From positions 62,001-126,000 of IMG/VR virus record IMGVR_UViG_3300048438_000153: a stretch of DNA of 64,000 nt. One strand, 5' to 3'. Position 1 is the first letter of the stretch. Each line of letters begins with the position of its first letter. The notes below the pieces were generated by a model, which saw nothing but the letters and a program-made list of their open reading frames with translations, did not search any database and had not been told where the DNA came from. Made by a program: the position numbers and the translations under genes. Shown one piece after another: positions 6,741 through 48,354 of the stretch.

Positions 6741-6754
6741 AAGCATTTATTCTC

Positions 6755-10797: not shown

Positions 10798-10809
10798 ATA
10801 AATAATCTA
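10798..10809 (-). promoter_or_regulatory. putative late-promoter element TAGATTATTTAT (representative of a family, consensus about TWNWTNNTYTAT)
   Basis: Similar 12-mers occur 38-57 nt upstream of about 14 starts; see findings. Confidence 0.6.
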
Positions 10810-10919
10810 TTATGGCTTGATCTGTGTCGGATAGTGTAGTACAAGATGGGTGGCTTTGGAGCTGAGGCAATCTCATCACCGCTCCGCTAACATCCCTCCC
10901 TTATGAGGCGTACATATAC

Positions 10920-11885: not shown

Positions 11886-12454
11886 GACTTGTTGATCACG
11901 ACCACATCATCTTTAGATGGGTATCTCCTTGCAAGCGAGCGCCACACACGCAGAGCGTGATCTGAAGTGGGGTTCGAGTTACAGTAGTTGGGAATGAACA
12001 AGAAAGGGACTCTCTTAGTGCGTCTCTCAAAGACGTAGTGGGCGAGTCTTAAGTAGCCCTCAAGACCACACTTACGCCCCCTGAAGCCCTCTTCTAAGTA
12101 GGAGTTAATCACTTCCACGACGTATACCTTACCATCAGGATTGAGGAGAGCTGAATGGTCAGAGACAAGCTCAGCCATTTCCTCATAGCAGACGTACTCA
12201 TCTAGCTCATCCATATGGACTAGAGAAACCGTAGCCTCAAAATCGCCTATTAACTTGTCTTCAGAGTATGCCTGTATGACACTCGTCAACGAGTCGGAGT
12301 CTATGTCCCAACCGCTCTCTCTGTGGAAAGAGACTTGAGACTTAGCGACGAGACGGCGCTCTCTCGACATCCTCTCAGGCGTAAGTGAGTAATCTTCAGG
12401 TAGAGTGCCTTTTGCCATCATGTGTCGGCTCGCGACTCGGATCGACATACTCAC
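11882..12454 (-). CDS. GNAT-like fold protein with RVASRH leader
   Basis: FRGRKCG resembles an acetyl-CoA loop. C-terminal TSDHALRVWRSLARRYPS. Paralogue of 15121-15630. Confidence 0.5.
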   Translation of the reverse strand: MSMSIRVASRHMMAKGTLPEDYSLTPERMSRERRLVAKSQVSFHRESGWDIDSDSLTSVIQAYSEDKLIGDFEATVSLVHMDELDEYVCYEEMAELVSDHSALLNPDGKVYVVEVINSYLEEGFRGRKCGLEGYLRLAHYVFERRTKRVPFLFIPNYCNSNPTSDHALRVWRSLARRYPSKDDVVVINKS

Positions 12455-12819
12455 CGCTTGCCTCCGTCGTAGGCAACTGCGTGACCCTCTTGGATCATGA
12501 GGTCATTAAGGGATTGACCTAGCTCAGTCATGTCCTCTTCATAGAGCCACAGGACACCGAGCCACCTCCCGAACTTACCCTTCTTAACAGTGTGGACGAT
12601 GACAGTCTTTCCCTCGATCAATTCCTTAAGAAAGTTTTTTGCCGAGTAGCCTCTTTCTTTCTCTTCGAGGTCTGTTGTTCTGATCTCAGGGGTGTTGATC
12701 CCAACAAGCCTGACTTTGACGCGCGCGAAGTGCTTCATGCCCTGATCAATCATCAAGGTCACAGTGTCTCCGTCATAGACAGAAATGACCTCTGCTTTGT
12801 AGTGATATAAGCTCTTCAT
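12451..12819 (-). CDS. thermonuclease (SNase-like)
   Basis: Motifs VYDGDT, VRLVGINTPE, GKFGRWLG and LNDLMIQEGHA. Start moved to MKSLYHY at 12819. Confidence 0.9.
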   Translation of the reverse strand: MKSLYHYKAEVISVYDGDTVTLMIDQGMKHFARVKVRLVGINTPEIRTTDLEEKERGYSAKNFLKELIEGKTVIVHTVKKGKFGRWLGVLWLYEEDMTELGQSLNDLMIQEGHAVAYDGGKR

Positions 12820-12820
12820 T

Positions 12821-13573
12821 TTATTTCCTTTCGGTATTGTTTCTTGAGTCAAACACACTCGCCATAGCAGAACCTAATATGCCTGTTAGGACGAGTAGCA
12901 CTCGCTCAATCATAGCGAGTGAGTCTTTAGCTTCGTTATTACCTGTAATCCAAGAAGTTATAATGAGGACGCCTAGCATTGTTATCAAGCCTACTGTGCC
13001 AGTGAATATTTGTCTTAAGAGTGTGATCTGACCTGTTATCTTCTTTTCCTGTAGCAAGGACTCTTCCGCTTTCATCTTTGCTTCATCAGACTCTTTTTTT
13101 AATTTCTCAAGCTCTTCAATAACCTTATGGTTCTCCTCGATACTCGACTGTAGTTGCTTCTCTCTTTCGACTTCCGAACTACGATCAACAAATAAAGCTA
13201 CAAAGTATCGTTCTTCAGAGTTCTTGATGTCTGCAACATTTGCAGACAATGAAACCAAAGAGCCGTCTTTTCGGACTGCCTCTAGCTTTCTCCAACTACC
13301 CATAATCCCACTACTACGCACAGACCTACCCGAATCTGAACCTTCCTTATAGGAGTTCACATAAGACCTGTGGTTTGAAGAGATACTTTCGGGCATTAAC
13401 TTGCGTACATCTAAGCCCACCATTTCTAAATGTTGATAGCCGAATAAGTGTGAAGCGGGTGTGTTCGCAAATCTTATTTCAAGATCACCTGATTTATCTT
13501 TAGGGTAATCACAGACTACAATAGCGATTTGTAGTCTGTTCCCCATCATTTCAAGAGTCTCTATAACCTTCAT
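12821..13573 (-). CDS. PAS domain (FixL-like) + coiled coil + two C-terminal TM helices
   Basis: IRFANTPASHLFGYQHLEMVGLDVRKLMPE...NHRSYV...RKDGS is a PAS signature. Two hydrophobic segments lie at the C-terminus. Confidence 0.8.
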   Translation of the reverse strand: MKVIETLEMMGNRLQIAIVVCDYPKDKSGDLEIRFANTPASHLFGYQHLEMVGLDVRKLMPESISSNHRSYVNSYKEGSDSGRSVRSSGIMGSWRKLEAVRKDGSLVSLSANVADIKNSEERYFVALFVDRSSEVEREKQLQSSIEENHKVIEELEKLKKESDEAKMKAEESLLQEKKITGQITLLRQIFTGTVGLITMLGVLIITSWITGNNEAKDSLAMIERVLLVLTGILGSAMASVFDSRNNTERK

Positions 13574-13585
13574 TTCTTACATCCC

Positions 13586-34189: not shown

Positions 34190-36868
34190 ATGTTTGACGA
34201 CTTTCTCGCAGACATAAGACGACCTGTCATAGAGTCCTACGAATGGATGAAAGAATGTGACCTAATCTTAGGCACGAAAGAGAACATAACTCAAGCCATT
34301 GACGAGTGCATGGCGGTTGAAGTCTACGGTTGCGACATCGAGACTACAGGACTTGACAACCGCGTCTTTGAAGGGCGCACGATGGACTCTATCGTGGGTA
34401 TCGGGATCGCGCCATCTCACGACAAGGCTTATTACTTTCCTATCGGACACAAGTCAGGCTCAGAGTATAACATTCCTTGGTCAATCATCGGACGAGAGTT
34501 TGGGCGTCTGTTCGACCCTTCCACGAAAGCCCGACCTGTCTTCCACAACATCTCTTTCGACGCGCCTTTCTTAGAGTACAACGGCTTCTTCTCGCTCGGG
34601 AAAGATCGGTGGGATGACCACAAGAAATGGGAAGACTCTCTCATCATCAAGTACCTCCTCAACCCACGTCAAAAAGGAGGGCGTGGGCTTAAGGCTCTGT
34701 CAGACAAGCTCTGTGACATGAAGATGATTGAGCTCAATGAGCTATTCCCCCCTGAAGAGGAACAGCGAGACTACTCGACCATTGACCCTTCATGGCAACC
34801 TTGTGTACTCTACGCGGCGGCTGATCCTCTCTGTACTCTCAGAATATGGGATATCATGAGAAAGGAATACGAAGATGCGCCTGAGCACTCTGACTCGATG
34901 TATAACCTCGAAAAGATGTGCTGTATCGCCACCTCATGGATGCACCGATGCCGAGTGTATATTGACCCTGAGAAAGCGATGGAGTCAGCGATTGAAGGTC
35001 AGCGCCTATGGTGGGAGAGTCTACTAGAGGTATATAAGGGCGCGTCTAAGATTCTAGAGAGAGACATCACACCCTCTTTCGTCAAGATCATGCGCGATGG
35101 ATCAAGAGGTCTGATCGAGCCCTTCGACCCCCGAGCCATCTCTGAGGGAGGGAGCGCCAACTACAAAGTGATCGTACAGGAAGCTCGAAGATACGCGCAA
35201 AACACCGCACCTGATCCAACTCAAAAGATCAGTAAGAGTGTGGCTCTGCTCGGTAAGTCTGCTGGTACTGAGAAAGTGGAGTTTCCCTATACGTATGACG
35301 TTCTCTCTCCTCAACAGCTAGGTTTGCTCTTGAGAGAGTTGGGAGTAGATGGTCTGCTCGCCTCTGAGAAGTCAGGCCAAGTAGTCACTAAGGGAGAAGT
35401 TCTCGATGAGGTCATCGAGAAAAACTCTGAGAAACTCCCTTTCATGAAGAAAGTGAAGAACCTCCGTGTTCTCGTCAAGGCGCTCAGCCAATACCTCATC
35501 CCTTTCATAGAGGACATTGGATCTGACGGTACGCTGAAGCCGAAGTTCGATCAGTTCAGTGCTGACACAGGGCGTTTTTCGTGTAAGACTAACAGTAAGC
35601 CCCATATCGTGAGAGACGGCGGTTGTCGCGTACCTTTTCAGGGCATCCCCGCCTATGGAAAAGACAAAGACAAGAAGCCCGCGATCATTTCTTACATGAG
35701 AGATTGTATAGTCGCGCGCGAAGAAGGGTGGTGGCTGACCGCGATTGACTACGCAGGTGTAGAGCTAAGACTCGTAACTAACCTCTCGAAAGAGCCCCTG
35801 TGGATTAAAGCTTTCTTCGAGTGTTCAGACTGTGGGCAACAGTACCCTAGAGAGATGGGGGAAGATGAGATTCCCACACCGACTCCAACCTATTGTGTGT
35901 GTGGGTCGGATCGCATAGGTGATCTGCACACTGTAACTGCGGTTGCTTTCTACGGCGAGGGCGCTAAGGGAAAACCTGATTGGAAAGACAAGCGAGGGAA
36001 CGGAAAGGGATGTAACTTCGCCCTTTCTTACGGAGGCACAGGGAAAGCTGTTCAGCGCACTATCAAGTGCTCTGCTAAGGAAGGGGACGAAAAGTATAAG
36101 ACTTTCACGAGCACTTACAAGACACTCGCCTCTTGGTGGGGGAAACAGAACAAGTTCGCCCATAAACATGGCTATGTTAAGACGGCTTTCGGACGAGTTC
36201 AGCCCCTCCCTGATATCCACGACGAGGATTACAGAAAGTCCTCGAAAGAGGAGAGAAAGGCGGTGAATGGACCTGTTCAGGGAACGAGCGCGGATATCAC
36301 GAAGCTCGCGATGAGTCTCATCTACAGAGAGGTTAAGAAACGAGGGTGGTTCGATAAGCTCAAGATGATCCTTACAGTCCACGACGAGATTGTCTTTGAG
36401 ATCCATGAAGACGTGATCGGAGAGGCTATCCCTGTACTGACTCAGATTATGGCGAGAAACAAAGCAATCGCCAATCAGGGATGGGAAGTCCCTCTCCTTG
36501 TAGACGTAGAGATCGGAAAGACGTGGGGAGTGCCATACGACCTCAAAGACTTAAGGCGAGGGTACAAGGAAAAGCTCGTACCTGACGGCGTTGATGAAAA
36601 GGGGGAGAAGAAGTACAGAGAGGAGCGCGTTCCTGTGCCTGAATCACTCGCTAAGATTTTCTATGTGGGGAGTGAGGCTGATGAGCCTTCTTCAAGCTCG
36701 CCTGAGAAAGAAGAAGGCTCAGGTTCTTCATCCGAAAGCCCCTCTAAGACTTATGTGCTTAAAGAGCTTTCTCAGGACTCCGCGTTCGATTTGGGTATGT
36801 GGCTCTCCCATAATACGGACGGTGTTGTAACGTATGAGGGGAGAGACATCACGGCGCTGTTTTCTTAG
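34190..36868 (+). CDS. polA: DNA polymerase family A with 3'-5' exonuclease
   Basis: ExoI CDIETTGL, ExoII FHNISFD, ExoIII YAAAD; DTGRFSC; motif A IDYAGVELR, motif B RGNGKGCNFALSYG, NGPVQGTSADI, motif C VHDEIV. Confidence 0.95.
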   Translation: MFDDFLADIRRPVIESYEWMKECDLILGTKENITQAIDECMAVEVYGCDIETTGLDNRVFEGRTMDSIVGIGIAPSHDKAYYFPIGHKSGSEYNIPWSIIGREFGRLFDPSTKARPVFHNISFDAPFLEYNGFFSLGKDRWDDHKKWEDSLIIKYLLNPRQKGGRGLKALSDKLCDMKMIELNELFPPEEEQRDYSTIDPSWQPCVLYAAADPLCTLRIWDIMRKEYEDAPEHSDSMYNLEKMCCIATSWMHRCRVYIDPEKAMESAIEGQRLWWESLLEVYKGASKILERDITPSFVKIMRDGSRGLIEPFDPRAISEGGSANYKVIVQEARRYAQNTAPDPTQKISKSVALLGKSAGTEKVEFPYTYDVLSPQQLGLLLRELGVDGLLASEKSGQVVTKGEVLDEVIEKNSEKLPFMKKVKNLRVLVKALSQYLIPFIEDIGSDGTLKPKFDQFSADTGRFSCKTNSKPHIVRDGGCRVPFQGIPAYGKDKDKKPAIISYMRDCIVAREEGWWLTAIDYAGVELRLVTNLSKEPLWIKAFFECSDCGQQYPREMGEDEIPTPTPTYCVCGSDRIGDLHTVTAVAFYGEGAKGKPDWKDKRGNGKGCNFALSYGGTGKAVQRTIKCSAKEGDEKYKTFTSTYKTLASWWGKQNKFAHKHGYVKTAFGRVQPLPDIHDEDYRKSSKEERKAVNGPVQGTSADITKLAMSLIYREVKKRGWFDKLKMILTVHDEIVFEIHEDVIGEAIPVLTQIMARNKAIANQGWEVPLLVDVEIGKTWGVPYDLKDLRRGYKEKLVPDGVDEKGEKKYREERVPVPESLAKIFYVGSEADEPSSSSPEKEEGSGSSSESPSKTYVLKELSQDSAFDLGMWLSHNTDGVVTYEGRDITALFS

Positions 36869-38839: not shown

Positions 38840-39161
38840 GATCCCCCGCAAGCATATTAGAAAGTTCCTCAACAAAGACCCTGAAACCATTGATATTATT
38901 AAGAAATGGCTCGACAAGAATGGGCTGATCATTCTCTTTACTCAAAGAAAAGCAAAGGGGTGGGAAAAAGTTTGGGCCACAGATGGGGGCAATATCTATA
39001 TGAATGATGAGGATCACAACCCTACTTCAGAAGAACTCGACATAAGGATCAGGAAAGTATCTGTGAAAGAGCAAGAGCCATTGCGCGAGGATCTGCTAGG
39101 GAAAGACGTGTCTTTGAGAGACAAACTAGAATACTTAAAAGAGATGGAAAGACCCCTGTAA
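38784..39161 (+). CDS. hypothetical protein
   Basis: Its stop overlaps the next start (TAATG). Exact start uncertain. Confidence 0.5.
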   Translation: MKKEEFGDLTWRRVSPLGKIPRKHIRKFLNKDPETIDIIKKWLDKNGLIILFTQRKAKGWEKVWATDGGNIYMNDEDHNPTSEELDIRIRKVSVKEQEPLREDLLGKDVSLRDKLEYLKEMERPL

Positions 39162-40354
39162 TGTTTTTTGAATATGATAAAGAAAAACCAAAGCTCCTAG
39201 ATGAGACAACAATAAATGGCCCGTCAGGAAACCTTTATATCCCCAAAGGGCTTTGGCAAGACATGATCAAATCTTATGAGAAAGAAGATGTCTTGAACCG
39301 CCTCCGAGACTTAATCAACAAGGGAGTGATTTCTTTCCCTTATCAACACTACAGTAAAGAGGAGGTGCTTGACGAGTTTCAGCGACTCAGGAACTCAGTA
39401 GCTTCTTTCTCTGAAAGCGAGTGGGAGTGCAACCGATTGGTGACTGAAGCCCCTCTCTCATTTAGGAGAGGTAGCTACTACACTCCCAAGTCAGCTCGGG
39501 TTGGGAGTAAGGTGTCTGATTTGTTCACACAGAGAATAAGAATGGAGGTTGGACATCAGAGGTTTCTTTCTCCTATAAGAGCGTGGGAGAGTGAAAGAAA
39601 GTCCTTTCTCAACTATCTCTTCAACCCTGATATGTTTGAAGGAGACATCAACGAAAGATGTCTCAGAGTTTCGCTGAGTATGAGGTCATACATTGCGAGT
39701 CAGTTCAAACCTGAGTCAGCTAAGGTCATTTATGATACCTTTCAAGCCAAGAGAGTCCTAGACTTCAGCGCGGGATGGGGAGATAGACTCGTCGGGTTCC
39801 TCGCAAGTAATGCTGAGAGTTATATAGGGATTGACCCTAACTCTAAACTCCACGAACCCTATCAGAAGATTGTCGATTTCTGTGACGTAGGGAAAGAAAC
39901 AAGGTTCATCTGCGCTCCCGCAGAGGAAGCAGATTTAACGGGTGTTGAGGTGGACTTTATATTCACCTCTCCTCCCTATTTCACTCTCGAAAGGTACAGT
40001 CAGGAAGACACTCAGAGTTGGAAGCGATACCCTAAAATCAACGCTTGGCTAGATGGATTTCTATTTCCTACTTTATCTAAGTGTTGGAATTGCCTTGAAG
40101 AAGGGGGGAGAGTACTCGTCAATATCGCCGACGCTTATACGAATGGAGAGCGAGAGGAAATATGTCAGCCGATGTTAAGACATATGGAATCTCTTGGGGC
40201 TACTTACGAGGGAGTCATAGGTTACGAAATGGGAGCGAGACCAGGTAAAAACATGGATAATATCGGCAAGACTTTCTGTGAGCCGATATGGGTTTGGAGC
40301 AAAGGGGAAGCTCCCGAACCTAAGTGGAAATCAGATACGTTTTTGGGAGTCTAA
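39161..40354 (+). CDS. DNA amino-methyltransferase (N4-C/N6-A type), paralogue 1
   Basis: Motif I VLDFSAGWGDR, IGIDPN, motif IV FTSPPYF. Confidence 0.85.
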   Translation: MFFEYDKEKPKLLDETTINGPSGNLYIPKGLWQDMIKSYEKEDVLNRLRDLINKGVISFPYQHYSKEEVLDEFQRLRNSVASFSESEWECNRLVTEAPLSFRRGSYYTPKSARVGSKVSDLFTQRIRMEVGHQRFLSPIRAWESERKSFLNYLFNPDMFEGDINERCLRVSLSMRSYIASQFKPESAKVIYDTFQAKRVLDFSAGWGDRLVGFLASNAESYIGIDPNSKLHEPYQKIVDFCDVGKETRFICAPAEEADLTGVEVDFIFTSPPYFTLERYSQEDTQSWKRYPKINAWLDGFLFPTLSKCWNCLEEGGRVLVNIADAYTNGEREEICQPMLRHMESLGATYEGVIGYEMGARPGKNMDNIGKTFCEPIWVWSKGEAPEPKWKSDTFLGV

Positions 40355-40355
40355 T

Positions 40356-41066
40356 ATGTGGGGTTATTATGGGTCAAAAGCAAAGATTGTTAGTCAATAC
40401 CCGAAGCCGACCAAAGATAAGATTATAGAGCCATTTGCAGGAACTGCTCAATATGCTCTTAAATACTTTGATAGAGACATAGAACTCTATGATAAATATG
40501 AGCTGATCGTAAATCTTTGGAAGTGGTTACAGAAATGTAGCCCAAAAGACATCACATCACTACCTCACTTAAAGGCAGGCGAGAGCGTAGATGATTACGA
40601 ATGGGATTGTGATGAAGCAAAACACTTAATAGGCTTCATCATTTCAGGCGGTGCTACTCAGCCAAAAAAATCAGTGACTAAGTGGAAAGCGGTGATCAGG
40701 CCGAACACTCAAAACTACAAGAAAACTCTCATTTCTTCTAACCTATACAAGATCAGGCATTGGAACATCGAGTGTAAGTCTTATGAAGAAATAGATAACC
40801 AAGAAGCTACTTGGTTCATTGACCCTCCTTATGAAGAGGGGGGGGTATATTACAGACACAGCTCAAAAAACATAGATTTCAGCCACCTTTCAGAATGGTG
40901 TCAGGAACGTGAGGGAGAAGTGATTGTCTGTGAGAAACAAGGTGCGTCTTGGCTTCCCTTTGAACCGCTTACAGAAGTGAAAGGCTTGAAGGCACAGAGC
41001 TTCCAAGAAGCAGTCTGGTTGAAGAACATGAGTTTACCTAAGCAATTAGACTTGTTTGGACTTTAA
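40356..41066 (+). CDS. Dam/D12-like N6-adenine methyltransferase (short form)
   Basis: YYGSK, IEPFAGTA, FIDPPY. True start MWGYY at 40356. Ends KQLDLFGL. Confidence 0.85.
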   Translation: MWGYYGSKAKIVSQYPKPTKDKIIEPFAGTAQYALKYFDRDIELYDKYELIVNLWKWLQKCSPKDITSLPHLKAGESVDDYEWDCDEAKHLIGFIISGGATQPKKSVTKWKAVIRPNTQNYKKTLISSNLYKIRHWNIECKSYEEIDNQEATWFIDPPYEEGGVYYRHSSKNIDFSHLSEWCQEREGEVIVCEKQGASWLPFEPLTEVKGLKAQSFQEAVWLKNMSLPKQLDLFGL

Positions 41067-41069
41067 GAA

Positions 41070-41246
41070 ATGAAGAACCAAATATTTAACGAGGTCTGCT
41101 TAGAAACCATGTCTCGAATGAGCGATAGCTCAATAGACAAAAACATGAATAACATCGGCAAGACCTTCTGTGAGCCGATATGGGTTTGGAGTAAGGGCGA
41201 AGCCCCTGAGCCCAAGTGGAACCAAGACACTTATTTCGGAGTATGA
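41070..41246 (+). pseudogene. 58-aa chimeric relic: beta-class MTase-like N-terminus fused to an SPPY-paralogue C-terminus
   Basis: MKNQIFNEVCLETMSRMSDSSID|KNMNNIGKTFCEPIWVWSKGEAPEPKWNQDTYFGV*. The second half nearly duplicates the end of 39161-40354. Confidence 0.75.
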
Positions 41247-41249
41247 AGC

Positions 41250-42401
41250 ATGAGTCTTACTAGAAAGAGCTTTCTCAACTCTAAAGGTGAGATATACCTC
41301 ACACAGAAAGAGATTAGAACCCTTGCGAAAGAACATGACATAGAAGAGATTATAGAGGTACTCGGTAAGATCGTAGACGAGTTGCCTTTCCCACTCACTG
41401 AGTACACAGATCAAGAGGTCATAACCGATTTTAATAGGTTAAAAAACACACACCTTGAAGTTATACGGGGCGGTTGGGTGAGCCACAGGATAGATGAGGC
41501 GATCTCTCCTTTATACAGAGGGGAGTCAATAAGATTCCCTAAGACAAGAAACATAGGGGGCAAAGTCTCTAATCAATACACAGAGGCGTTAAGGTTATCT
41601 ACGCCTCATGCGAGATACAAAAGCCACAAAGATCTTTGGTATGCTAAGAGAAAGTATTGGTTAAAGTATTTCTTCAACATCAAGATGCACACAGGAAATC
41701 TCGAACAGGGTAAGCTGAGGCAAGGTTTGTCAGGTCAATATTACTGCTCTCAGTTTAAACCTCTCATCGCTAAGTCAATGTACGATACTTTCCAAGCTAA
41801 GAGAGTCTTAGACTTCAGCGCGGGATGGGGAGACAGACTCGTGGGCTTCCTCGCGAGCGGAGCTGAGAGTTATGTCGGGATAGACCCTAACTCTAAGCTA
41901 CATGAACCCTATCAGAAGATCGCTGATTCTATTTCTGATAGGGTAGCTTCGACTTTCGTCAGCCCTGCGGAAGATTTTGATTATAACTCTGTTGAGTACG
42001 ACTTTGTGTTTACTAGCCCTCCCTATTTCGACCTAGAGAGATACAGCAACGAAGGCACTCAAAGTTGGAAAAGGTACTCAGAATTTGAAGAGTGGGTTCA
42101 AAACTTCCTGTTTAAAACGCTAACCGCCTGTTGGAGAAACCTCTCAGACAACGGTCGGATGATAATTAACATATCTGACATATATTCAAAGGGAGCAAAG
42201 AGAGAGATCTGTAGCCCCATGTTAAGACATATGGAGTCTCTAGGCGCTACCTATGAAGGTGTTATAGGGTATGAGATGGCCCATAAGACTAGCAAATCGG
42301 TTAAGCGACACGATCTGCCTTTCTGCGAGCCTATGTTCGTGTGGTCAAAAGGAAACCCACCTGAGCCTCAGTGGAACTCCCAACTCTTTTTTGAGATCTA
42401 A
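41250..42401 (+). CDS. DNA amino-methyltransferase, paralogue 2
   Basis: VLDFSAGWGDR and FTSPPYF. Confidence 0.85.
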   Translation: MSLTRKSFLNSKGEIYLTQKEIRTLAKEHDIEEIIEVLGKIVDELPFPLTEYTDQEVITDFNRLKNTHLEVIRGGWVSHRIDEAISPLYRGESIRFPKTRNIGGKVSNQYTEALRLSTPHARYKSHKDLWYAKRKYWLKYFFNIKMHTGNLEQGKLRQGLSGQYYCSQFKPLIAKSMYDTFQAKRVLDFSAGWGDRLVGFLASGAESYVGIDPNSKLHEPYQKIADSISDRVASTFVSPAEDFDYNSVEYDFVFTSPPYFDLERYSNEGTQSWKRYSEFEEWVQNFLFKTLTACWRNLSDNGRMIINISDIYSKGAKREICSPMLRHMESLGATYEGVIGYEMAHKTSKSVKRHDLPFCEPMFVWSKGNPPEPQWNSQLFFEI

Positions 42402-42537
42402 GACTCCTGACCCTGAGCCTAAGTGGACACAAGACAACTTCTTCGGAGTTTAAGAAATGCAGAACCAAATCTTCAATGAGGAGTACTTCAAGATGTCGAA
42501 AGTAAGACTAGAAAACACTCAGGAGTATCTTTTCTAA
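42402..42537 (+). pseudogene. two relics: an orphan MTase tail (PDPEPKWTQDNFFGV*) and an internally deleted MTase mini-ORF at 42457-42537
   Basis: The mini-ORF MQNQIFNEEYFKMSKVRLENTQEYLF* joins an N-terminus like that at 41070 to a beta-MTase-type C-terminal EEY..S..RL helix. Confidence 0.65.
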
Positions 42538-43238
42538 TGCACCACATACAAGAAAGAAACTGCGCTGAAGCGTGGATTAAAGCCACTCAAGACATCCTCT
42601 CTAAAGGAGAGAATATGGGTGGCCTATACGAGATCCTCAATATGGGGATAGAAATCACTTCCTCTGAGGTATGTCCTGTCTTTGACAGCCATTTCAGAGA
42701 CGTCTTCGGAGACGAGAGAATAGACTATGCTAAGTCTGTCACTTTCATCGAGCCTAAGCCCAACCCTCTCTTTCCCGATTTAAGAGAATACGAGCAGAAC
42801 AAGACGGGGAAATGGACAAATAGCTATTGGGGTCGGATGTTCTCTTGGAACGGCGGATTCAACCAAGTCGAACAGACGATTAAGAGACTGAAAGAGAACA
42901 AGCAAGCCAAGACCATCGTAATCGGAGTCTACGACCCTCAGACTGACGGAAAGAAAGTCATGGGAGGGATGCCCTGTCTGCTCACCATAGACCTCAAGCC
43001 TAGAGGCGGTAAACTTAACCTCACAGCTAACTTTAGGAGTCAGGCTGTCTCCAAGTCAGGGTATGCGGATTACATGGCTCTCGTAGAGTTCTGTGACTTC
43101 CTCTGCAAAGAGAGCGGGTGTCTCGACTTTGGGTTAGTGACTTCTTTCGCTCACTCATGTCATGTGAGGACTCAAAACGGAGAACTTAAGAAATCCAAGG
43201 AGCTGATGAGGAGATATCATGAAGAAATGGGTAGCTGA
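42537..43238 (+). CDS. thymidylate-synthase-fold pyrimidine-modifying enzyme (dCMP hydroxymethylase-like)
   Basis: YWGR, NQVEQTIKRL, MPC (catalytic Cys), FRSQAVSKSGYAD, HSCH. Confidence 0.8.
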   Translation: MHHIQERNCAEAWIKATQDILSKGENMGGLYEILNMGIEITSSEVCPVFDSHFRDVFGDERIDYAKSVTFIEPKPNPLFPDLREYEQNKTGKWTNSYWGRMFSWNGGFNQVEQTIKRLKENKQAKTIVIGVYDPQTDGKKVMGGMPCLLTIDLKPRGGKLNLTANFRSQAVSKSGYADYMALVEFCDFLCKESGCLDFGLVTSFAHSCHVRTQNGELKKSKELMRRYHEEMGS

Positions 43239-44130
43239 TTTTAAGAGTATTCTTTACTCCACTATAGAGGCTCTCCCCCCTGAAGTGAGTCTTTCTTTCT
43301 CGGGTGGCGTTGACTCCTCTATGCTTTTATTCGCTATGATTGATTTAGGCAGACCCCCTACAGAGCTCATCACATTCAAGATTGTAGGGGAATACTCTAA
43401 GGACTTAGATTTCGCTAGAAAGACCGCCCATCATTACGGCATCCCTTTGAGGGTTGCTCAGATCCCAAGTAACCCTCAAAAGAAAGACCTCGAAAGAGAG
43501 ATTAAAGAGATTCTTAGAGAAACGAGAGTTTCTCGGAGCATAGACACTCAGGTGTCCTATGCCTACTCCTACATGACCTCAATCACCTCAACTGACCATC
43601 TTGTTCTCGGGTTCTACGAGGACTTGTACTGCCTCAACAATAAGAAAAACTCTGTCATGTATAGCAATATGCTAAAGGGAAATCTCTCTGAGAAAGAGTT
43701 CGTTTCTTGGATCAATCAAGAAAGAGTCGAAATATATCAAGGCAAGGTTGCAGGGCGCAAAGCTCAGATTGACCACAACTATGTCGTGATCTCTAACTAC
43801 ATTGAGTCTAAGGGTATTCAGACTATCTGTCCCCTCAGAAATCAGGAGATGTTGGATCATTGTCTTAAGAAAGGGTTTGAAGATCTGACGTTCGATCTGA
43901 ATGGAAAGAGAAGGTCTAAGTGGTTCATCAAAGACATGATCTTTAAGAAGTATTTCGACCAACACAAAACCAACATATCTAACTTTCATACATCGGGAAA
44001 AGAAGGTGGGCTGAAAGGTCTGCATCAGAGGGTGCTTCTAACAGGATCACCATACAAAGACACAAGAGCAATTTACAATCAAATACTTAAAGACATTGAG
44101 TTTGAAGAGAGCGCGCATTTCCTATGCTAA
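43219..44130 (+). CDS. asparagine-synthetase-like PP-loop ATP pyrophosphatase/amidoligase (no glutaminase domain)
   Basis: SLSFSGGVDSS, DLDFARKTAHHYGI, CPLRN, SKWFIK. Confidence 0.8.
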   Translation: MKKWVADFKSILYSTIEALPPEVSLSFSGGVDSSMLLFAMIDLGRPPTELITFKIVGEYSKDLDFARKTAHHYGIPLRVAQIPSNPQKKDLEREIKEILRETRVSRSIDTQVSYAYSYMTSITSTDHLVLGFYEDLYCLNNKKNSVMYSNMLKGNLSEKEFVSWINQERVEIYQGKVAGRKAQIDHNYVVISNYIESKGIQTICPLRNQEMLDHCLKKGFEDLTFDLNGKRRSKWFIKDMIFKKYFDQHKTNISNFHTSGKEGGLKGLHQRVLLTGSPYKDTRAIYNQILKDIEFEESAHFLC

Positions 44131-44957
44131 ACCTACACACACCTGTCGAAACTTACCGCATAGAAAGCACTGAGGTAGACGTTAAGAGAGATGACCTTCA
44201 TAATGGAGATCTCGACCTCCCTCCTTGGGCAAAGCTAGAGGGGGTGCGCCAACTACTCCTCTCAGACTGCTTCGATAAAAGAAAGCCCATCGTACACCTA
44301 ACTATCAGAGGTTCATACACAGGGTGGGCTCTTTCTTATTTCGGGAGAGAATACGGGTACGACATCAAGATCGCCTATCCGAAAACCAAGTCTTACCCTC
44401 AAGAAATGCTCGATAAGATCACTCAATATGGAGGGGAACTTGTGCCTCTCCGACATAATATGGTGGCGGTTCTCTCAGCTCAGGTTAAGAAGATGGCTAA
44501 AGAGCGCGGGTGGCAAATGAGCCCCGACGCTTTCAACCACCCTGTCTATGTAAAGTCTTGGAAAGAAAGATCTGCTTCTTTCTTTCAAGAGAACGACTAT
44601 CAGACCCTCGTCATTCAAGGGGGGAGTGGAGTTACGAGTGTTGGACTCATTCAGAGTTTTCTCGGTGTAGATTACATTGCGGGTCAGATGTTTGAGCCCA
44701 CATACGAGGGAAAGAAAGTAATCATCATCTCCACCTCAAGTGTAAAGACCGTGAAGTCTGCGCTCGTATCAAATATGGGGAGTGTGCCTTCGTGTGTAGA
44801 AATCTACAAATCTGAACATGACTTCTATGACGAGATTCCTACTCATGCGACACCGTTCCCCTGTAACCGTCTGTGGGACAAGAAAGCGTGGGTTTGGATG
44901 ACTCAGAATGTGGGTGAGTTGAAGGATAGAACTCTCTTTTGGAACTTGGGGGCATAA
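44124..44957 (+). CDS. PLP-dependent fold-type II enzyme (D-cysteine desulfhydrase/ACC deaminase-like)
   Basis: TPVE...VKRDDL...WAK (PLP Lys), GGSGVT phosphate loop, WDKKAW, LFWNLG. Confidence 0.8.
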   Translation: MLNLHTPVETYRIESTEVDVKRDDLHNGDLDLPPWAKLEGVRQLLLSDCFDKRKPIVHLTIRGSYTGWALSYFGREYGYDIKIAYPKTKSYPQEMLDKITQYGGELVPLRHNMVAVLSAQVKKMAKERGWQMSPDAFNHPVYVKSWKERSASFFQENDYQTLVIQGGSGVTSVGLIQSFLGVDYIAGQMFEPTYEGKKVIIISTSSVKTVKSALVSNMGSVPSCVEIYKSEHDFYDEIPTHATPFPCNRLWDKKAWVWMTQNVGELKDRTLFWNLGA

Positions 44958-44960
44958 GCT

Positions 44961-46184
44961 GTGTTTTTTGAGTACGAGAAAGAACTGCCTAAAACAGATC
45001 TCTCTGACTATAGTCTCCTCAAGAATGGGCAAATCTCTATACCTTCCTATGTATGGCGCGAGATTAAAAACAGCTTCGATAAGAAAGAGGTGATCGAGCA
45101 CATCTCTCAACTTATACAAGATCACAACCTCCCCTACCCGAGTAGGACATACACAAAAGCTGTACTCGACAGGGACTTCAGAAAGCTCAAGAGCGAGTCA
45201 TGTGGTGTGAAAGAGGGATCTTGGGAGTGCTTGAGGACGATCCCTAATGTCACTCTTAAATACCTTAATCGTCAGTGCTACATACAGGCTAGTCAACATG
45301 GTCTAAAAGTCTCGGATCAGCAGACGCATCTCTCTCGCATGAAATGCGCTCACTTCGAGCACAAGAGTCCGTACAGAGAATGGACTCGGCAAGGGTGCAA
45401 GTCGAAGGTCAGATACGTTCTAAGAGTGTTGTGGAGTCTATCAGAAGGAGACGCCCTTAAGAACGGTGTGTGCGAGAAGCAACTGAGAGACTGCTTGAGG
45501 TTGGGCAACTACATGGCGAGTCAGTTCAAGCCCTCATGCGCTAAGACCCTGTATGATTTCTTTCAGGCTAAGAGAGTCTTAGACCTAAGCTCAGGGTGGG
45601 GTGACAGGCTCGTAGGTTTTCTTGCGAGTGGGGCTGAGAGCTATGTCGGGATAGACCCTAACTCTGAACTCCACGAACCCTATCAGAAGATCGCTGACTT
45701 CTGTGACACAGGGAAGGAAACACGATTCATCTGTGATCCCGCAGAGGACGCAGACTTAACGGGTGTTGAGGTGGACTTCGTATTTACGAGCCCCCCTTAC
45801 TTTGACGTTGAAAAGTACAGTGAAGAAGACACTCAGAGTTGGAAACGATATAAGTCGAAAGACCTATGGCTGAATAACTTCTTTCTCCCATCGCTCACTA
45901 AGGCTTGGGAGGCTCTTTCTGAGGGAGGGAGGATAGCCATCAACATCGCAGACAAGGGTCACTCAAGAGAAGATGTGGGCGAGGACATCTGTAGCCCCAT
46001 GTTAAGACATATGGAGTCTCTAGGCGCTACCTATGAGGGGATTATCGGGTATAGGATGAACAAGAGGCCGGGTGACAGAATGGGCGCGGTTGGAGGCGCG
46101 GTTTTCTGTGAGCCGATATGGGTTTGGAGTAAGGGTGAAGCCCCTGATCCCAAGTGGACTCAAGACACCTATTTCGGAGTTTAA
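44961..46184 (+). CDS. DNA amino-methyltransferase, paralogue 3
   Basis: VLDLSSGWGDR and FTSPPYF; GTG start. Confidence 0.85.
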   Translation: MFFEYEKELPKTDLSDYSLLKNGQISIPSYVWREIKNSFDKKEVIEHISQLIQDHNLPYPSRTYTKAVLDRDFRKLKSESCGVKEGSWECLRTIPNVTLKYLNRQCYIQASQHGLKVSDQQTHLSRMKCAHFEHKSPYREWTRQGCKSKVRYVLRVLWSLSEGDALKNGVCEKQLRDCLRLGNYMASQFKPSCAKTLYDFFQAKRVLDLSSGWGDRLVGFLASGAESYVGIDPNSELHEPYQKIADFCDTGKETRFICDPAEDADLTGVEVDFVFTSPPYFDVEKYSEEDTQSWKRYKSKDLWLNNFFLPSLTKAWEALSEGGRIAINIADKGHSREDVGEDICSPMLRHMESLGATYEGIIGYRMNKRPGDRMGAVGGAVFCEPIWVWSKGEAPDPKWTQDTYFGV

Positions 46185-46185
46185 G

Positions 46186-47364
46186 ATGTTTTTCGATTAC
46201 GAAAAAGAGATCACATCTCTCGATGAGATCAAGTATATTAAGAACGGTTATTTCCACATCCTCCCTAGTGAGTGGGAGATGCTTAGAAAGTCTTTTACCA
46301 AGGAAGAAATAAAAGACCATATCGCGCCCATCCTGAGTTCATTACCGTACCCCTATTTCGAGTATTCAGAGAAAGAGCTGAGGAGAGATTTCTCTAAGCT
46401 GAAATCACTCTCGAATAAACTCAAGCAAGGGGAATGGGTAGCTACAAGACAAGCAGCAGAAAGAGACACACTCTTTCTCGGTCAGAGTATCTATATGGAC
46501 TGCTACTACACAGGGAAAGGAATATCTGATCAGTACACTCAAGAGGCGCGCTTTAAATGCTCTTATAGAGCTGTCGGTAACTCCCCTTACGACGAGTGGG
46601 TCAGTGCGGACAAGAAGAACTCTTTCTTAAGATGTTTCTTCGGCATCTCAGAGAGGGACATCTACGAAAGAGGAGGAGTCAACAAGCAGACACTCAGGCG
46701 CGCTCTAAAGATGCACACATACACAGCGAGTCAGTTCAAGGCTGAAGCCTCTAAAACCCTGTATGATTTCTTTCAGGCTAAGAGAGTCTTAGACTTCAGT
46801 GCAGGATGGGGTGACAGGCTCGTGGGTTTCCTCGCTAGCGGAGCAGATAGTTATGTCGGGATAGACCCTAACTCTAAGCTACATGAACCCTATCAGAAGA
46901 TCGTCGATTTCTGTAACACAGGGAAGGAAACACGATTCATCTGTGCTCCCGCAGAGGACGCAGACTTAACAGGTGTTGAGGTGGACTTCGTGTTTACAAG
47001 TCCTCCCTATTTTGACATAGAGAGATACAGTGACGAAGACACTCAGAGTTGGAAACGATACCCTGAAATAGACTCTTGGGTCGAGGGCTTCTTCCTCCCC
47101 ACTCTAAGCAAGTGTTGGAGTGTTCTTTCTGAGGGCGGGAGAATACTTGTCAACATCGCCGATAAGAAGGGCAACGACATCTGTAGCCCCATGTTAAGAC
47201 ATATGGAGTCTCTAGGCGCTACCTATGAGGGTGTTATAGGCTACCGTATGTCAGAAAGAGGAGGGCAAAAGACCACCGTACCGAGCTGTGAGCCGATATG
47301 GGTTTGGTCTAAAGGCGACGCGCCCGAACCTAAGTGGACTCAAGACACCTATTTCGGAGTTTAA
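46186..47364 (+). CDS. DNA amino-methyltransferase, paralogue 4
   Basis: True start MFFDYEKE at 46186; VLDFSAGWGDR and FTSPPYF. Confidence 0.85.
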   Translation: MFFDYEKEITSLDEIKYIKNGYFHILPSEWEMLRKSFTKEEIKDHIAPILSSLPYPYFEYSEKELRRDFSKLKSLSNKLKQGEWVATRQAAERDTLFLGQSIYMDCYYTGKGISDQYTQEARFKCSYRAVGNSPYDEWVSADKKNSFLRCFFGISERDIYERGGVNKQTLRRALKMHTYTASQFKAEASKTLYDFFQAKRVLDFSAGWGDRLVGFLASGADSYVGIDPNSKLHEPYQKIVDFCNTGKETRFICAPAEDADLTGVEVDFVFTSPPYFDIERYSDEDTQSWKRYPEIDSWVEGFFLPTLSKCWSVLSEGGRILVNIADKKGNDICSPMLRHMESLGATYEGVIGYRMSERGGQKTTVPSCEPIWVWSKGDAPEPKWTQDTYFGV

Positions 47365-47562: not shown

Positions 47563-47682
47563 ATCTTTTCTCCGATATAGGTGTTGGTGTGTGGGAATGA
47601 GTCGGAACTGACTCATGAACATTTATACCGATCAGTTTTACTTTTATACCTAGTTAAGAGAAAAGTAGAAAGAGGGACACTC

Positions 47683-48354
47683 ATGAGAACAATCACAGCA
47701 AGAGTCGCCACAAAGTTCTTAAAGAAAGCAGCGGAAAGTCTTGAGATACACATCTATGACTTCGATGGAACTCTGTTCCGTAGTCCTGAAGCTCCTGAGT
47801 GGTGGAGTAAAAGAAGATATGGTCAGTGGCACTCCAACCAATCTTCATTGGGTCAGCCCTTTGTGCCTAACAACCCTTCTTCAGACTATTGGATTAACGG
47901 CGTAGTAGAGGAAGCAAAGAAGTCCATAGCAGACTTGAATACTTGGGCAGTCATGTGTACAGGACGCATCGACACAGGAGCTCTCAGATACAGAGTGGCT
48001 GAGTTACTGAGGCAAGAGGGTCTTGATTTCGATCAGAACTTTCTTAACGACACAGGTAGGCTGACAAGACCCTACAAGAAAGTGACTCTAATCGAACTCC
48101 TGAAGCAGTTCCCACAGGTCAAGAAAGTCGTTGTGTGGGAGGACACTCAGAAAAACCTCGACGCGCTCGAAAGCATCTGCGACAGGATCGGGATCGAGTT
48201 TGAAGGGAAGCTCATTTCTGAGAGGCTTCTCTCTTCAAACCACATCTCAGAGGATGAATACATAGACTTTCTTAGAGGAGAGCTCTCCGCTAAAGAGTTC
48301 ACTCAGATCTATAAGGCTCTACAGAAGAGTAGAAAGAGAAAGCAAGAATTATGA
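47683..48354 (+). CDS. HAD-superfamily phosphatase (Swiss-Army-Knife RNA-repair type) with RVATKFL leader
   Basis: IYDFDGTLFRSP, MCTGR, YKK, WED. Confidence 0.8.
   Translation: MRTITARVATKFLKKAAESLEIHIYDFDGTLFRSPEAPEWWSKRRYGQWHSNQSSLGQPFVPNNPSSDYWINGVVEEAKKSIADLNTWAVMCTGRIDTGALRYRVAELLRQEGLDFDQNFLNDTGRLTRPYKKVTLIELLKQFPQVKKVVVWEDTQKNLDALESICDRIGIEFEGKLISERLLSSNHISEDEYIDFLRGELSAKEFTQIYKALQKSRKRKQEL

What the first reader, a model, noticed from the sequence alone, without database searches (positions are those of the whole stretch)
39161..47364. Methyltransferase gene accordion: constant catalytic halves, hypervariable N-halves
The four paralogues share near-identical DNA from SQFK through the C-terminus, including an exact 50-bp triple repeat. 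Their ~170-190-aa N-terminal regions and a short loop before CEP(I/M)W/F diverge strongly. This fits specificity-domain diversification by recombination or gene conversion to track host restriction systems.
Basis: partly seen in the sequence, partly recalled or inferred. Interest (0 to 1): 0.65.

Follow-up and report, generated by a model that had tools for sequence, protein, structure and literature searches.

The report
Phage methyltransferase array, shared catalytic halves
A marine jumbo phage carries four old sister genes for probable DNA methyltransferases whose catalytic halves are kept alike by gene conversion, while each keeps its own conserved, not hypervariable, front domain, most likely so the phage can methylate several different DNA sites and escape host restriction.

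Summary
The four paralogues (M1-M4) are real and sit in a seawater jumbo-phage genome of 275 kb. The exact 50-bp triple repeat is real. "Near-identical DNA" is overstated: the C-halves are 63-80% identical in DNA, with patches of 85-95%.

The N-halves are not hypervariable. They are four old, discrete types. Each has 60-86% identical relatives in other marine phages and evolves under purifying selection (omega about 0.1).

Gene conversion of the catalytic halves is supported by three results:
- Silent-site identity among the window's copies is 60% in the C-halves and 39% in the N-halves. M4 against its own orthologues scores 37%.
- A DNA tree joins M2, M3 and M4, and the AU test rejects placing M4 with its orthologues (p 0.009).
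- Exact runs of 50-56 nt exceed nearly all shuffles.

The loop before CEPIW escapes homogenisation and tracks the N-type.

The array also holds a Dam-like methyltransferase, two stubs of a beta-class methyltransferase, an orphan gene tail, and a thymidylate-synthase-like/PP-loop/PLP trio. Relatives carry 2 to at least 9 copies.

The proteins are amino-methyltransferases with the TSPPY motif, so probably m4C enzymes. Their basic N-domain has no solved structural relative. Distinct specificities and an anti-restriction role are inferred, not shown.

The parts
39161..40354 (+). M1, family methyltransferase of 397 aa (N-type A). Motif I is DFSAGWGDR and motif IV is TSPPYF.
   Evidence: ORF. Pfam N6_N4_Mtase scores 30.4 bits against a cut-off of 26.7. 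The N-half groups with L006_9995 and L009_5058 (SH-aLRT 98). In the DNA tree its C-half stays with L006_9995 (SH-aLRT 97).
40356..41066 (+). Dam-like (D12 class) adenine methyltransferase of 236 aa with a DPPY motif. It sits between two copies of the family's 3' tail (40247-40350 and 41139-41242, 84% identical).
   Evidence: Pfam MethyltransfD12 scores 29.8 bits against a cut-off of 22. phrog_56. Flanking repeat family D2.
41070..41246 (+). Stub 1, a 58-aa ORF. It joins the first 23 aa of a beta-class methyltransferase to the last 35 aa of a family member, so it is a deletion remnant.
   Evidence: Sequence. The full-length beta-class gene is present at the same place in L006:11292-12089. The tail matches the family profile at positions 358-398.
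41250..42401 (+). M2, family methyltransferase of 383 aa (N-type B). It is the most divergent copy, lacks the MFFxYEK head and has an altered tail. Its catalytic motifs are intact.
   Evidence: ORF. Pfam scores 34.3 bits. Its N-type has about 70% identical relatives, P0099 and P0103-P0106.
42411..42453 (+). Orphan 3' tail of a lost family member (PEPKWTQDNFFGV plus stop), 9 nt after the M2 stop codon.
   Evidence: Repeat family D4, 87% identical to the M3 tail. Sequence.
42457..42537 (+). Stub 2, a 26-aa ORF made of the first 8 and last 18 aa of the beta-class methyltransferase, so it is an internal deletion.
   Evidence: Compared with L006:11292-12089.
42537..43238 (+). Short protein of the thymidylate synthase family, 233 aa, with the catalytic Cys context PCL. 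It is a second TS-family gene, because the genome also has a ThyX.
   Evidence: Pfam Thymidylat_synt scores 26.2 bits. TIGR03283 E 4.5e-19, below its cut-off. Atlas feature score 0.96. ThyX lies elsewhere in the genome. It is 85% identical in L011 and 84% in L013, at the same place in their arrays.
43219..44130 (+). PP-loop ATPase of 303 aa with an SGGVDS motif, like asparagine synthase, TilS or QueC.
   Evidence: Pfam Asn_synthase scores 26.4 bits. NCBIfam hits to TilS_N, asn_synth and QueC are all below their cut-offs.
44124..44957 (+). PLP-dependent enzyme of 277 aa. Its relatives are of fold type II (my knowledge), like cysteine synthase or threonine synthase.
   Evidence: phrog_7093 E 3.3e-20. 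Pfam PALP scores 30.8 bits, below its cut-off of 35. PDB cysteine synthase E 0.003.
44961..46184 (+). M3, family methyltransferase of 407 aa (N-type C), with a GTG start.
   Evidence: ORF. Pfam scores 23.9 bits, below the cut-off. The N-half pairs with L015_3838 (SH-aLRT 89). The C-half DNA lies in a clade with M2 and M4 (SH-aLRT 99).
46186..47364 (+). M4, family methyltransferase of 392 aa (N-type D). Its start codon lies one base after the M3 stop codon.
   Evidence: Pfam scores 31.4 bits. AF2 model with pLDDT 90.5. The N-half groups with L015_11492, L013_13621 and L011_13621 (SH-aLRT 99).
42207..42256 (+). Exact 50-mer, copy in M2. The other copies are at 45987-46036 (M3) and 47179-47228 (M4). 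This is a recent gene-conversion tract.
   Evidence: Exact search. The same codons vary at silent sites in every other genome and in M1. Runs of 50-56 nt were reached in 0, 0 and 6 of 2000 codon-column shuffles.
41868..41922 (+). Exact 55-mer shared by M2 and M4 (second copy at 46849-46903), around motif I.

Best explanation
The interval is the core of a DNA-modification island in an uncultured marine jumbo phage, next to its DNA polymerase gene. It holds four members of a virus-borne family of amino-methyltransferases.

Each member has two modules:
- A type-specific, basic N-terminal domain of about 180 aa. Its fold has no solved relative.
- An acidic Rossmann catalytic domain. Its motif order is gamma-like (I before IV) and it carries an invariant TSPPYF motif IV, which is the N4-cytosine signature.

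The four copies are ancient paralogues. Each N-type is conserved in other phages.

Short-tract gene conversion between neighbouring copies partly homogenises the catalytic domains. It stops at the domain border, and it skips at least the loop before CEPIW. That loop stays true to the N-type.

The array grows and shrinks by whole-gene gain and loss at the conserved gene head (MFFxYEK) and tail (PEPKWxQDxxFGV). The last codons of the tail carry a GGAG ribosome-binding site for the next gene.

Inferred function: each paralogue methylates a different DNA sequence. The N-domain and the loop before CEPIW would do the recognition. Together with the Dam-like enzyme, this would protect phage DNA from several host restriction systems.
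For: Shown:
- Family and fold. Pfam N6_N4_Mtase scores over its cut-off in 3 of 4 copies. The AF2 model has pLDDT 90.5. Its C-half is a class I methyltransferase fold, nearest to Trm11, TrmN and METTL5 at Z 15-16. Whole-length look-alikes in the ESM Atlas are viral clusters named cytosine-N4 methyltransferase, at TM 0.84-0.87.
- The N-half has no Pfam family, no Foldseek match in the PDB and a best VIA Z of 3.1.
- pI is 7.7-9.4 for the N-halves and 4.7-5.3 for the C-halves.
- N-types are orthologous across genomes (SH-aLRT 98-99 for M1 and M4, 89 for M3). All four have 60-86% identical relatives. Omega between orthologues is 0.07-0.22 in the N-halves and 0.02-0.08 in the C-halves.
- Gene conversion, silent sites. 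Identical codons at identical residues among the window's paralogues are 500/831 in the C-halves against 109/281 in the N-halves (Fisher p 6e-10). For M4, the C-half scores 284/434 against the window's paralogues and 167/446 against its own orthologues (p 8e-17).
- Gene conversion, trees. The C-half DNA tree joins M2, M3 and M4 (SH-aLRT 99), and the AU test rejects M4 with its orthologues (p 0.009). The N-half rejects an M3+M4 pair (p 0.00025).
- Gene conversion, tracts. Exact runs of 50-56 nt exceed nearly all shuffles. The 50-mer is not conserved at silent sites elsewhere.
- The loop before CEPIW tracks the N-type. M4 matches its orthologues at 10 of 13 positions and M3 at 3 of 17.
- Family-wide, 112 relatives give 21-30 N-half clusters at 40-50% identity but a single C-half cluster at 50%.
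- Array dynamics. Stubs and orphan tails are present. Relatives carry 2-7 and at least 9 copies. The order of types differs between genomes.
- The tail carries a GGAG 6-9 nt before the next start codon.
Against: - No experiment or methylome links any copy to a DNA motif, or even to DNA as the substrate.
- The nearest solved structures are RNA amino-methyltransferases. Some sources name relatives RsmD or TrmN6.
- At the protein level the C-half tree does not reject M4 with its orthologues (AU p 0.40). The case for conversion therefore rests on DNA and silent sites.
- M1 shows little conversion.
- Other base-modifying genes inside the arrays leave room for a different substrate.
- The host and its restriction systems are unknown.
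Confidence: 0.6

Rival explanations
1. There is no gene conversion. The catalytic halves look constant only because purifying selection is stronger there, and the long exact runs are chance or a constraint on the nucleotide sequence.
For: Omega is lower in the C-halves than in the N-halves. dS between the C-halves of paralogues is still 0.7 to above 2. The protein-level AU test is not significant.
Against: - Silent-site identity is 60% within the genome. The same columns give 36-38% between M4 and its orthologues, and the N-halves give 39%.
- In the DNA tree M2, M3 and M4 form one clade, and the AU test gives p 0.009.
- The 50-mer varies at silent sites in every other genome.
- Runs of 50-56 nt were reached in 0, 0 and 6 of 2000 shuffles.
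Confidence: 0.08
2. This is a true gene accordion: a recent tandem amplification of one methyltransferase under selection, followed by rapid divergence of the N-halves, as in poxvirus K3L arrays.
For: The genes are in tandem and point the same way. Copy number differs among relatives.
Against: - N-half silent sites are saturated.
- Each N-type has orthologues in other phage lineages.
- The N-halves are under purifying selection.
- Contigs of four seawater runs show no alternative joints.
Confidence: 0.04
3. The paralogues are not sequence-specific DNA methyltransferases. They would methylate RNA (tRNA or rRNA), or a hypermodified base made by the island's other enzymes. The N-domains would then recognise different substrates rather than DNA words.
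For: - The best solved matches are Trm11, TrmN, Trm14 and METTL5.
- Some sources name relatives RsmD or TrmN6.
- The arrays embed TS-like, PP-loop, PLP, QueC-like::hydroxylase, P-loop+GNAT and 2OG-oxygenase genes.
- The genome already has a ThyX, so the TS-like gene is not needed for dTMP.
Against: - Pfam N6_N4_Mtase scores over its cut-off.
- Motif IV is TSPPYF, which I recall as the PROSITE N4-methyltransferase signature (my knowledge).
- The nearest cultured-phage relative is annotated as an N4-cytosine DNA methylase.
- The copies share their array with a Dam-like and a beta-class DNA methyltransferase.
- RNA and DNA amino-methyltransferases share this fold, so the structural neighbours do not decide the question.
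Confidence: 0.2
4. The repeats are an assembly artefact, for example collapsed or chimeric copies.
For: Short-read unitigs break at the repeat borders.
Against: A separate 149 kb IMG/VR record has the same 21 kb with 3 mismatches. At least 9 seawater runs hold over half of the sampled words. The same kind of array occurs in many other contigs.
Confidence: 0.01

Closest known systems
Phage orphan DNA methyltransferases of the N6/N4 amino-methyltransferase superfamily (Pfam PF01555), such as the N4-cytosine methylase annotated in Vibrio phage 2.058.O (MG592662.1)
   Same: SAM-binding motif I and motif IV (S/D/N)PP(Y/F). No restriction partner was seen nearby. Phage-borne. The presumed role is protection from host restriction.
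   Different: The Vibrio phage enzyme is only 32% identical, and only over the catalytic half. Motif I precedes motif IV here, whereas the beta-class enzymes typical of PF01555 have the reverse order (my knowledge; the alignment to 8s9m shows that order). The family has its own N-terminal domain of about 180 aa, with no Pfam family and no solved relative. It comes in arrays of 2 to at least 9 copies.
Specificity change by domain exchange in Helicobacter pylori methyltransferases and Type I S subunits (Furuta et al., PMC3077401 and PMC3983042), and the variable recognition domains of Type III mod alleles (PMC4417156)
   Same: A conserved catalytic framework combined with interchangeable recognition regions. 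Recombination between homologous flanks is the engine.
   Different: In those systems recombination moves or replaces the recognition region, between alleles or strains. Here the recognition halves are stable and orthologous, and it is the catalytic half that is converted among tandem paralogues within one phage genome. I took these papers from titles and abstracts only.
Multispecific C5-cytosine methyltransferases of Bacillus phages SPR, phi3T and rho11s (my knowledge)
   Same: A phage achieves several methylation specificities with one type of catalytic core.
   Different: Those enzymes carry several recognition domains in one polypeptide and make m5C. Here there are separate genes with one N-domain each, the chemistry is amino-methyltransferase, and the genome has no PF00145 match.
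Poxvirus gene accordions (K3L amplification; my knowledge)
   Same: A tandem array of an anti-host-defence gene in a large DNA virus, with variable copy number.
   Different: Accordion copies are recent and near-identical. These paralogues are ancient, each has orthologues elsewhere, and silent sites are saturated in the N-halves.
Concerted evolution of tandem multigene families by gene conversion limited to one domain (a general phenomenon; my knowledge)
   Same: Similarity within the genome exceeds similarity between orthologues at silent sites. The tracts are patchy. Trees from different parts of the gene disagree.
   Different: I found no description of this for phage methyltransferase arrays in four literature searches.

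Membership tests
N6/N4 amino-methyltransferases (Pfam PF01555 and relatives) | Pfam profile match over the gathering score | tested here: met
   M1 scores 30.4, M2 34.3 and M4 31.4 bits against a cut-off of 26.7. M3 scores 23.9, just under it. Only profile positions 1-110 are matched.
N6/N4 amino-methyltransferases (Pfam PF01555 and relatives) | SAM-binding motif I (FxGxG-like) and catalytic motif IV (S/D/N)PP(Y/F) | tested here: met
   D(F/L)S(A/S)GWGDR and TSPPYF occur in all four copies. The core of motif I (GWGDR) and TSPPYF are invariant in 23 family members.
N6/N4 amino-methyltransferases (Pfam PF01555 and relatives) | Class I Rossmann methyltransferase fold | tested here: met
   AF2 pLDDT 90.5. 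Z 15-16 to Trm11, TrmN and METTL5 over 173-188 residues.
N6/N4 amino-methyltransferases (Pfam PF01555 and relatives) | Beta-class motif order (IV before I), usual for PF01555 members | tested here: not met
   Motif I (about residue 205) precedes motif IV (about residue 272). The alignment to the beta-class chain 8s9m needs a circular permutation.
N4-cytosine DNA methyltransferases | Product is N4-methylcytosine in double-stranded DNA at a defined sequence | not testable with these tools
   There are only indirect pointers: the TSPPY form of motif IV (my knowledge), the annotation of a 32% identical relative and the automatic names of ESM Atlas clusters.
Gene accordion (recent tandem amplification) | Copies are near-identical throughout and younger than the split from sister genomes | tested here: not met
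   N-halves are 26-36% identical in protein with saturated dS. Each type has orthologues in other lineages.
Gene accordion (recent tandem amplification) | Copy-number variants within one population | tested here: inconclusive
   Contigs of four seawater runs show no true alternative joint, but contigs drop rare variants. Between related genomes, copy number is 2-7 and at least 9.
Multigene family under concerted evolution (gene conversion) | Silent-site similarity of paralogues within a genome exceeds that of orthologues between genomes | tested here: met
   For the M4 C-half, 65% against the window's paralogues and 37% against its orthologues (p 8e-17). The N-halves serve as a control at 39%.
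Multigene family under concerted evolution (gene conversion) | Trees from different parts of the gene disagree, with statistical support | tested here: met
   The N-half rejects M3+M4 (p 0.00025). The C-half DNA rejects M4 with its orthologues (p 0.009). The C-half protein test is not significant (p 0.40).
Restriction-modification system (methyltransferase with a cognate nuclease) | A restriction endonuclease or specificity subunit gene beside the methyltransferase | tested here: not met
   Pfam and PHROGs scans of the 10-11 ORFs scanned between 38028 and 48354 found no nuclease, HsdS or HsdR. An unrecognised nuclease among the unnamed ORFs is not excluded.

The most novel reading that the evidence does not exclude
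The arrays would be a recombination-ready cassette system.
- The conserved head (MFFxYEK) and tail (PEPKWxQDxxFGV, with a built-in GGAG) would act as universal adaptors. Whole methyltransferase genes, and unrelated modification genes, could then be inserted, lost or reordered by homologous exchange.
- Gene conversion would keep the catalytic domain interchangeable across more than 20 N-domain types circulating among marine jumbo phages.
- The strongly conserved but disordered C-terminal tail might also be a docking motif that ties the enzymes to the replisome.

In short, it would work like an integron without an integrase, and would let a phage reshuffle a repertoire of DNA-marking specificities.
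Probability: 0.15. Interest if true: 0.65.

Novelty: new variant of a known kind. Interest (0 to 1): 0.45.

Why it matters
Phage orphan methyltransferases are a known answer to restriction. How a phage assembles and maintains many specificities is poorly documented.

This array gives a clean natural example. One catalytic module is kept uniform by domain-limited gene conversion. It is paired with at least 20-30 stable N-domain types of unknown fold across marine jumbo phages.

If the N-domain and the loop before CEPIW set specificity, the family would offer three things:
- a ready-made set of modular, probably m4C, methyltransferases for methylome engineering;
- a new DNA-recognition fold;
- a marker for reading phage-host restriction pressure in the sea.

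If they do not set specificity, the island points to uncharted nucleic-acid modification chemistry.

Tried and rejected
- Megablast of the region against GenBank phages found no match.
- The closest cultured phages match only the catalytic half, at 26-32% identity.
- A profile search of PDB sequences gave only marginal hits, the best E 0.009 to 2zie.
- For the N-half alone, Pfam gave nothing, Foldseek against the PDB gave nothing, VIA-align gave a best Z of 3.1, and Atlas features gave only unnamed viral clusters at 0.83.
- The protein-level AU test on the C-half was not significant (p 0.40). The DNA-level test was needed.
- The apparent joint '46180 to 41400, goes back 4781' in the laid contigs is cross-matching of the stub-1 tail with the M3 tail. 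It is not a structural variant.
- I looked for a phage sliding clamp to test the idea that the conserved tail is a docking motif. PF02768 and PF02916 gave no match, so I ran no complex prediction.
- The scan of prokaryote genomes found only relatives of 37% identity or less (34% or less for the full-length matches), mostly in MAGs, so it gave no host clue.
- The promoter and terminator scan was at chance level.
- Four literature searches found no description of this family or array.
- I did not use the large representative protein search, as the operators advised. The word search already gave 1518 relatives.
- Read laying was given exactly 6000 letters.

Full report
**What the window is.**
- The window is bases 62001-126000 of a 275,102-base IMG/VR virus record, judged 88% complete.
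- The finding lies just downstream of a family-A DNA polymerase gene (34190-36868). Its best GenBank relative is an uncultured 485 kb phage, at 44% identity.
- The 8.2 kb stretch occurs in many seawater and marine metagenome runs. Nine of them hold over half of the sampled words.
- So this is an uncultured marine jumbo phage, and its host is unknown.

**Checking the observation.**
- The four paralogues exist: M1 39161-40354, M2 41250-42401, M3 44961-46184 and M4 46186-47364, all on the + strand.
- Before the SQFK motif they are 26-36% identical in protein. After it they are 60-80% identical.
One 50-mer occurs at 42207, 45987 and 47179.
- Every exact repeat of 30 nt or more in the 64 kb window lies in this array.
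- "Near-identical DNA" is not correct. The C-halves are 63-80% identical in DNA with dS of 0.7 to above 2. They form a mosaic of 85-95% patches separated by stretches of 40-60%.
- The array is not an artefact. A different IMG/VR record of 149 kb matches window 29161-50351 with 3 mismatches in 21191 bases. Contigs of four seawater runs lie on it at 99-100% identity.

**What else lies in the interval.**
- Between M1 and M2 there is a Dam-like D12-class methyltransferase (40356-41066). It is flanked by two 104-nt copies of the family's 3' tail.
- Next comes a 58-aa stub (41070-41246). It joins the first 23 residues of a beta-class methyltransferase to the last 35 residues of a family member.
- Nine bases after the M2 stop codon there is an orphan family tail (42411-42453).
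- A 26-aa stub follows (42457-42537). It consists of the first 8 and last 18 residues of the same beta-class enzyme.
- The intact beta-class gene stands at the matching place in a related phage, L006:11292-12089.
- Between M2 and M3 lie three more genes: a short thymidylate-synthase-family gene, a PP-loop ATPase and a PLP-dependent enzyme.
- The same trio sits inside the arrays of L011 and L013. There the TS-like protein is 84-85% identical to the window's.

**The proteins.**
- The C-half matches Pfam N6_N4_Mtase over its cut-off in three of the four copies.
- It has motif I (DFSAGWGDR) about 65 residues before motif IV (TSPPYF). The core of motif I (GWGDR) and TSPPYF are invariant in 23 family members.
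- This order is gamma-like, not the beta order usual for that Pfam family.
- An AlphaFold model of M4 is confident (pLDDT 90.5). Its C-half is a class I methyltransferase fold, nearest to the nucleic-acid amino-methyltransferases Trm11, TrmN and METTL5 (Z 15-16).
- Whole-length look-alikes in the ESM Atlas are viral clusters, two of them named cytosine-N4 methyltransferase (TM 0.84-0.87).
- The N-half has no Pfam family. Folded alone (pLDDT 84) it has no solved relative (best Z 3.1; no Foldseek match).
- The N-halves are basic (pI 7.7-9.4) and the C-halves acidic (pI 4.7-5.3). This fits a nucleic-acid-binding N-domain but does not prove one.
- TSPPY is the form of motif IV typical of N4-cytosine enzymes. 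That statement rests on my own knowledge and was not tested here.

**The N-halves are old and stable, not hypervariable.**
- Thirteen related viral loci carry one to six family copies each.
- In a tree of N-halves the window's genes group with genes of other genomes, not with each other. M1 groups with L006_9995 and L009_5058 (SH-aLRT 98). M4 groups with L015_11492, L013_13621 and L011_13621 (SH-aLRT 99). M3 groups with L015_3838 (SH-aLRT 89).
- All four N-types, M2's included, have 60-86% identical relatives among metagenome proteins.
- Between orthologues the N-halves have omega 0.07-0.22, against 0.02-0.08 for the C-halves. That is purifying selection, only somewhat weaker than on the catalytic domain.
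- Among 112 full-length relatives the N-halves fall into 21-30 clusters at 40-50% identity. The C-halves form a single cluster at 50%. The constant/variable design is therefore a property of the whole family.

**The C-halves are partly homogenised by gene conversion.** Three lines of evidence agree.
- Silent sites. Among residues identical in both genes, the codon is also identical in 500 of 831 cases in the C-halves of the window's paralogues, but in 109 of 281 in their N-halves (p 6e-10). The M4 C-half shares 284 of 434 such codons with its window paralogues, but only 167 of 446 with its own N-half orthologues (p 8e-17).
- Trees. A DNA tree of C-halves joins M2, M3 and M4 (SH-aLRT 99), and the AU test rejects M4 with its orthologues (p 0.009). 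The N-half rejects an M3+M4 pair (p 0.00025).
- Tracts. Exact runs of 50-56 nt between M2/M3, M2/M4 and M3/M4 were reached in 0, 0 and 6 of 2000 shuffles of codon columns. The 50-mer's codons vary at silent sites in M1 and in every other genome. It is therefore a recent conversion tract, not a conserved nucleotide element.

Two caveats apply. The protein-level AU test on the C-half is not significant (p 0.40). M1 has largely stayed with its orthologue.

**Conversion skips the loop before CEPIW.**
- This loop follows the N-type, not the genome.
- M4 matches its orthologues at 10 of 13 loop positions, but M3 at only 3 of 17. M1 matches L006_9995 at 12 of 16.
- The segment after the NI.D motif looks type-specific by eye for the M1 and M4 types, but less so for M3. 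I did not measure it.
- The N-half, this loop and perhaps that segment are thus inherited together, while the rest of the catalytic domain is exchanged around them.
- This is what one expects if together they recognise the target. It is the best available support, still indirect, for different specificities.

**Array dynamics.**
- Copy number in related records is 7 (a complete 376 kb genome), 3, 3 and 2.
- One 86.6 kb marine contig holds about nine paralogues: eight genes of family size in the 21 kb fetched, and nine family proteins whose longest recorded contig has that length.
- The order of types differs between genomes. Other genes are embedded in the arrays: a QueC-like::Asp/Asn-hydroxylase fusion, a P-loop+GNAT protein, a 2OG-Fe(II) oxygenase and a T5orf172 protein.
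- Deletion remnants that keep a head and a tail occur in the window, and also in L013.
- The gene head (MFFxYEK) and tail (WSKGEAPEPKWxQDN(F/Y)FGV) are conserved across nearly all types and genomes compared.
- The last codons of the tail contain GGAG 6-9 nt before the next start codon. Genes abut or overlap each other (TAATG, TAAGATG).
- I infer that these conserved ends serve two roles. They couple translation along the array, and they supply homology for unequal exchange that adds, removes or replaces whole genes.
- This is birth-and-death evolution with partial concerted evolution, not a recent accordion.

**How it most likely works.**
- Shown: the family, the fold, the motifs, the orthology of the N-types, the gene conversion of the catalytic halves, the type-specific loop, the remnants and the copy-number differences.
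- Inferred: the substrate is DNA; the product is m4C; the N-domain and the type-specific loop set different target sequences; and the four enzymes, together with the Dam-like one, protect the phage from restriction in its host or hosts.
- Main rival (about 0.2): these enzymes act on RNA, or on a base made by the island's other enzymes. The genome has a ThyX elsewhere, so the TS-like gene in the array probably makes a modified pyrimidine rather than dTMP.

**Comparison with known systems.** The closest known kinds are these.
- Phage orphan amino-methyltransferases.
- Methyltransferases whose recognition regions are exchanged by recombination: H. pylori, Type I S subunits and Type III mod (PMC3077401, PMC3983042, PMC4417156; titles and abstracts only).
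- The multispecific C5 enzymes of Bacillus phages (my knowledge).

The present case differs in four ways. The recognition half is N-terminal and of unknown fold. The specificities sit in separate tandem genes. The recognition halves are stable. Recombination acts on the catalytic half. Four literature searches found no description of this family or of such arrays.

**Limits.**
- No methylome or activity data exist for this family.
- The host is unknown.
- Trees used a quick search.
- The laid runs are short contigs, which cannot show rare structural variants.

Noticed in passing
window 42537-44957: A short thymidylate-synthase-family gene, a PP-loop ATPase and a PLP-dependent enzyme (fold type II by its relatives, my knowledge) sit together inside the methyltransferase array. 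The same trio sits inside the arrays of L011 and L013. The genome has a ThyX elsewhere (G000:C1:204698-205327). The trio may therefore make a modified pyrimidine, but the chemistry is unknown.
   Followed up: partly
window 39161-39184, and the last 50 nt of each family gene (for example 46135-46184): The head MFFxYEK and the tail PEPKWxQDxxFGV are the best-conserved parts across nearly all N-types compared, yet they are modelled with low confidence. The tail ends with a GGAG ribosome-binding site for the next gene. Conservation at the protein level suggests an additional short linear motif, perhaps for docking. I found no phage clamp gene to test this with.
   Followed up: partly
L020 (NCBI GCA_001757045.1, MDTC01012631.1), 1-13575: A marine contig of 86.6 kb appears to carry about nine paralogues of the family. 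Eight genes of family size lie in the 21 kb fetched. They are interleaved with a PLP enzyme, a 693-aa protein with an Asp/Asn-hydroxylase domain, a 2OG-Fe(II) oxygenase and a T5orf172 protein.
   Followed up: partly
L015:9490-11499, L006:13304-14482, L006:15682-16557: Other arrays embed different putative base-modifying genes: a QueC-like PP-loop fused to an Asp/Asn hydroxylase domain, a P-loop plus GNAT acetyltransferase, and a lone QueC-like protein. The island looks like a variable toolbox for nucleic-acid modification.
   Followed up: partly
L013:8437-8729 (same in L014): This is a family member reduced to its head (about 44 aa) and tail (about 37 aa). It is the same kind of internal deletion as the stubs in the window.
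   Followed up: no
G000:C1:246314-246598 and 247858-248103 (outside the window): The two halves of a Pfam N6_N4_Mtase match lie 1.3 kb apart on the same strand. This may be a split or interrupted methyltransferase gene. A further C-terminal fragment lies at G000:C1:147020-147259.
   Followed up: no
ESM Atlas cluster, row 4: One viral cluster of 575-aa proteins shares the whole fold (TM 0.74) and also carries a LAGLIDADG homing-endonuclease domain. Some members of the family therefore appear to be invaded by, or fused to, a homing endonuclease.
   Followed up: no
window 47581-48354: An ORF with the HAD_SAK_1 domain ('Swiss Army Knife' RNA-repair HAD, Pfam E 1.3e-13) lies just downstream of the array. 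It is conserved in L006.
   Followed up: no
window 34190-36868: The family-A DNA polymerase matches its best GenBank relative (LR745208.1, a 485 kb uncultured phage) in three separate pieces spread over 4.9 kb. The relative's gene may be interrupted.
   Followed up: no
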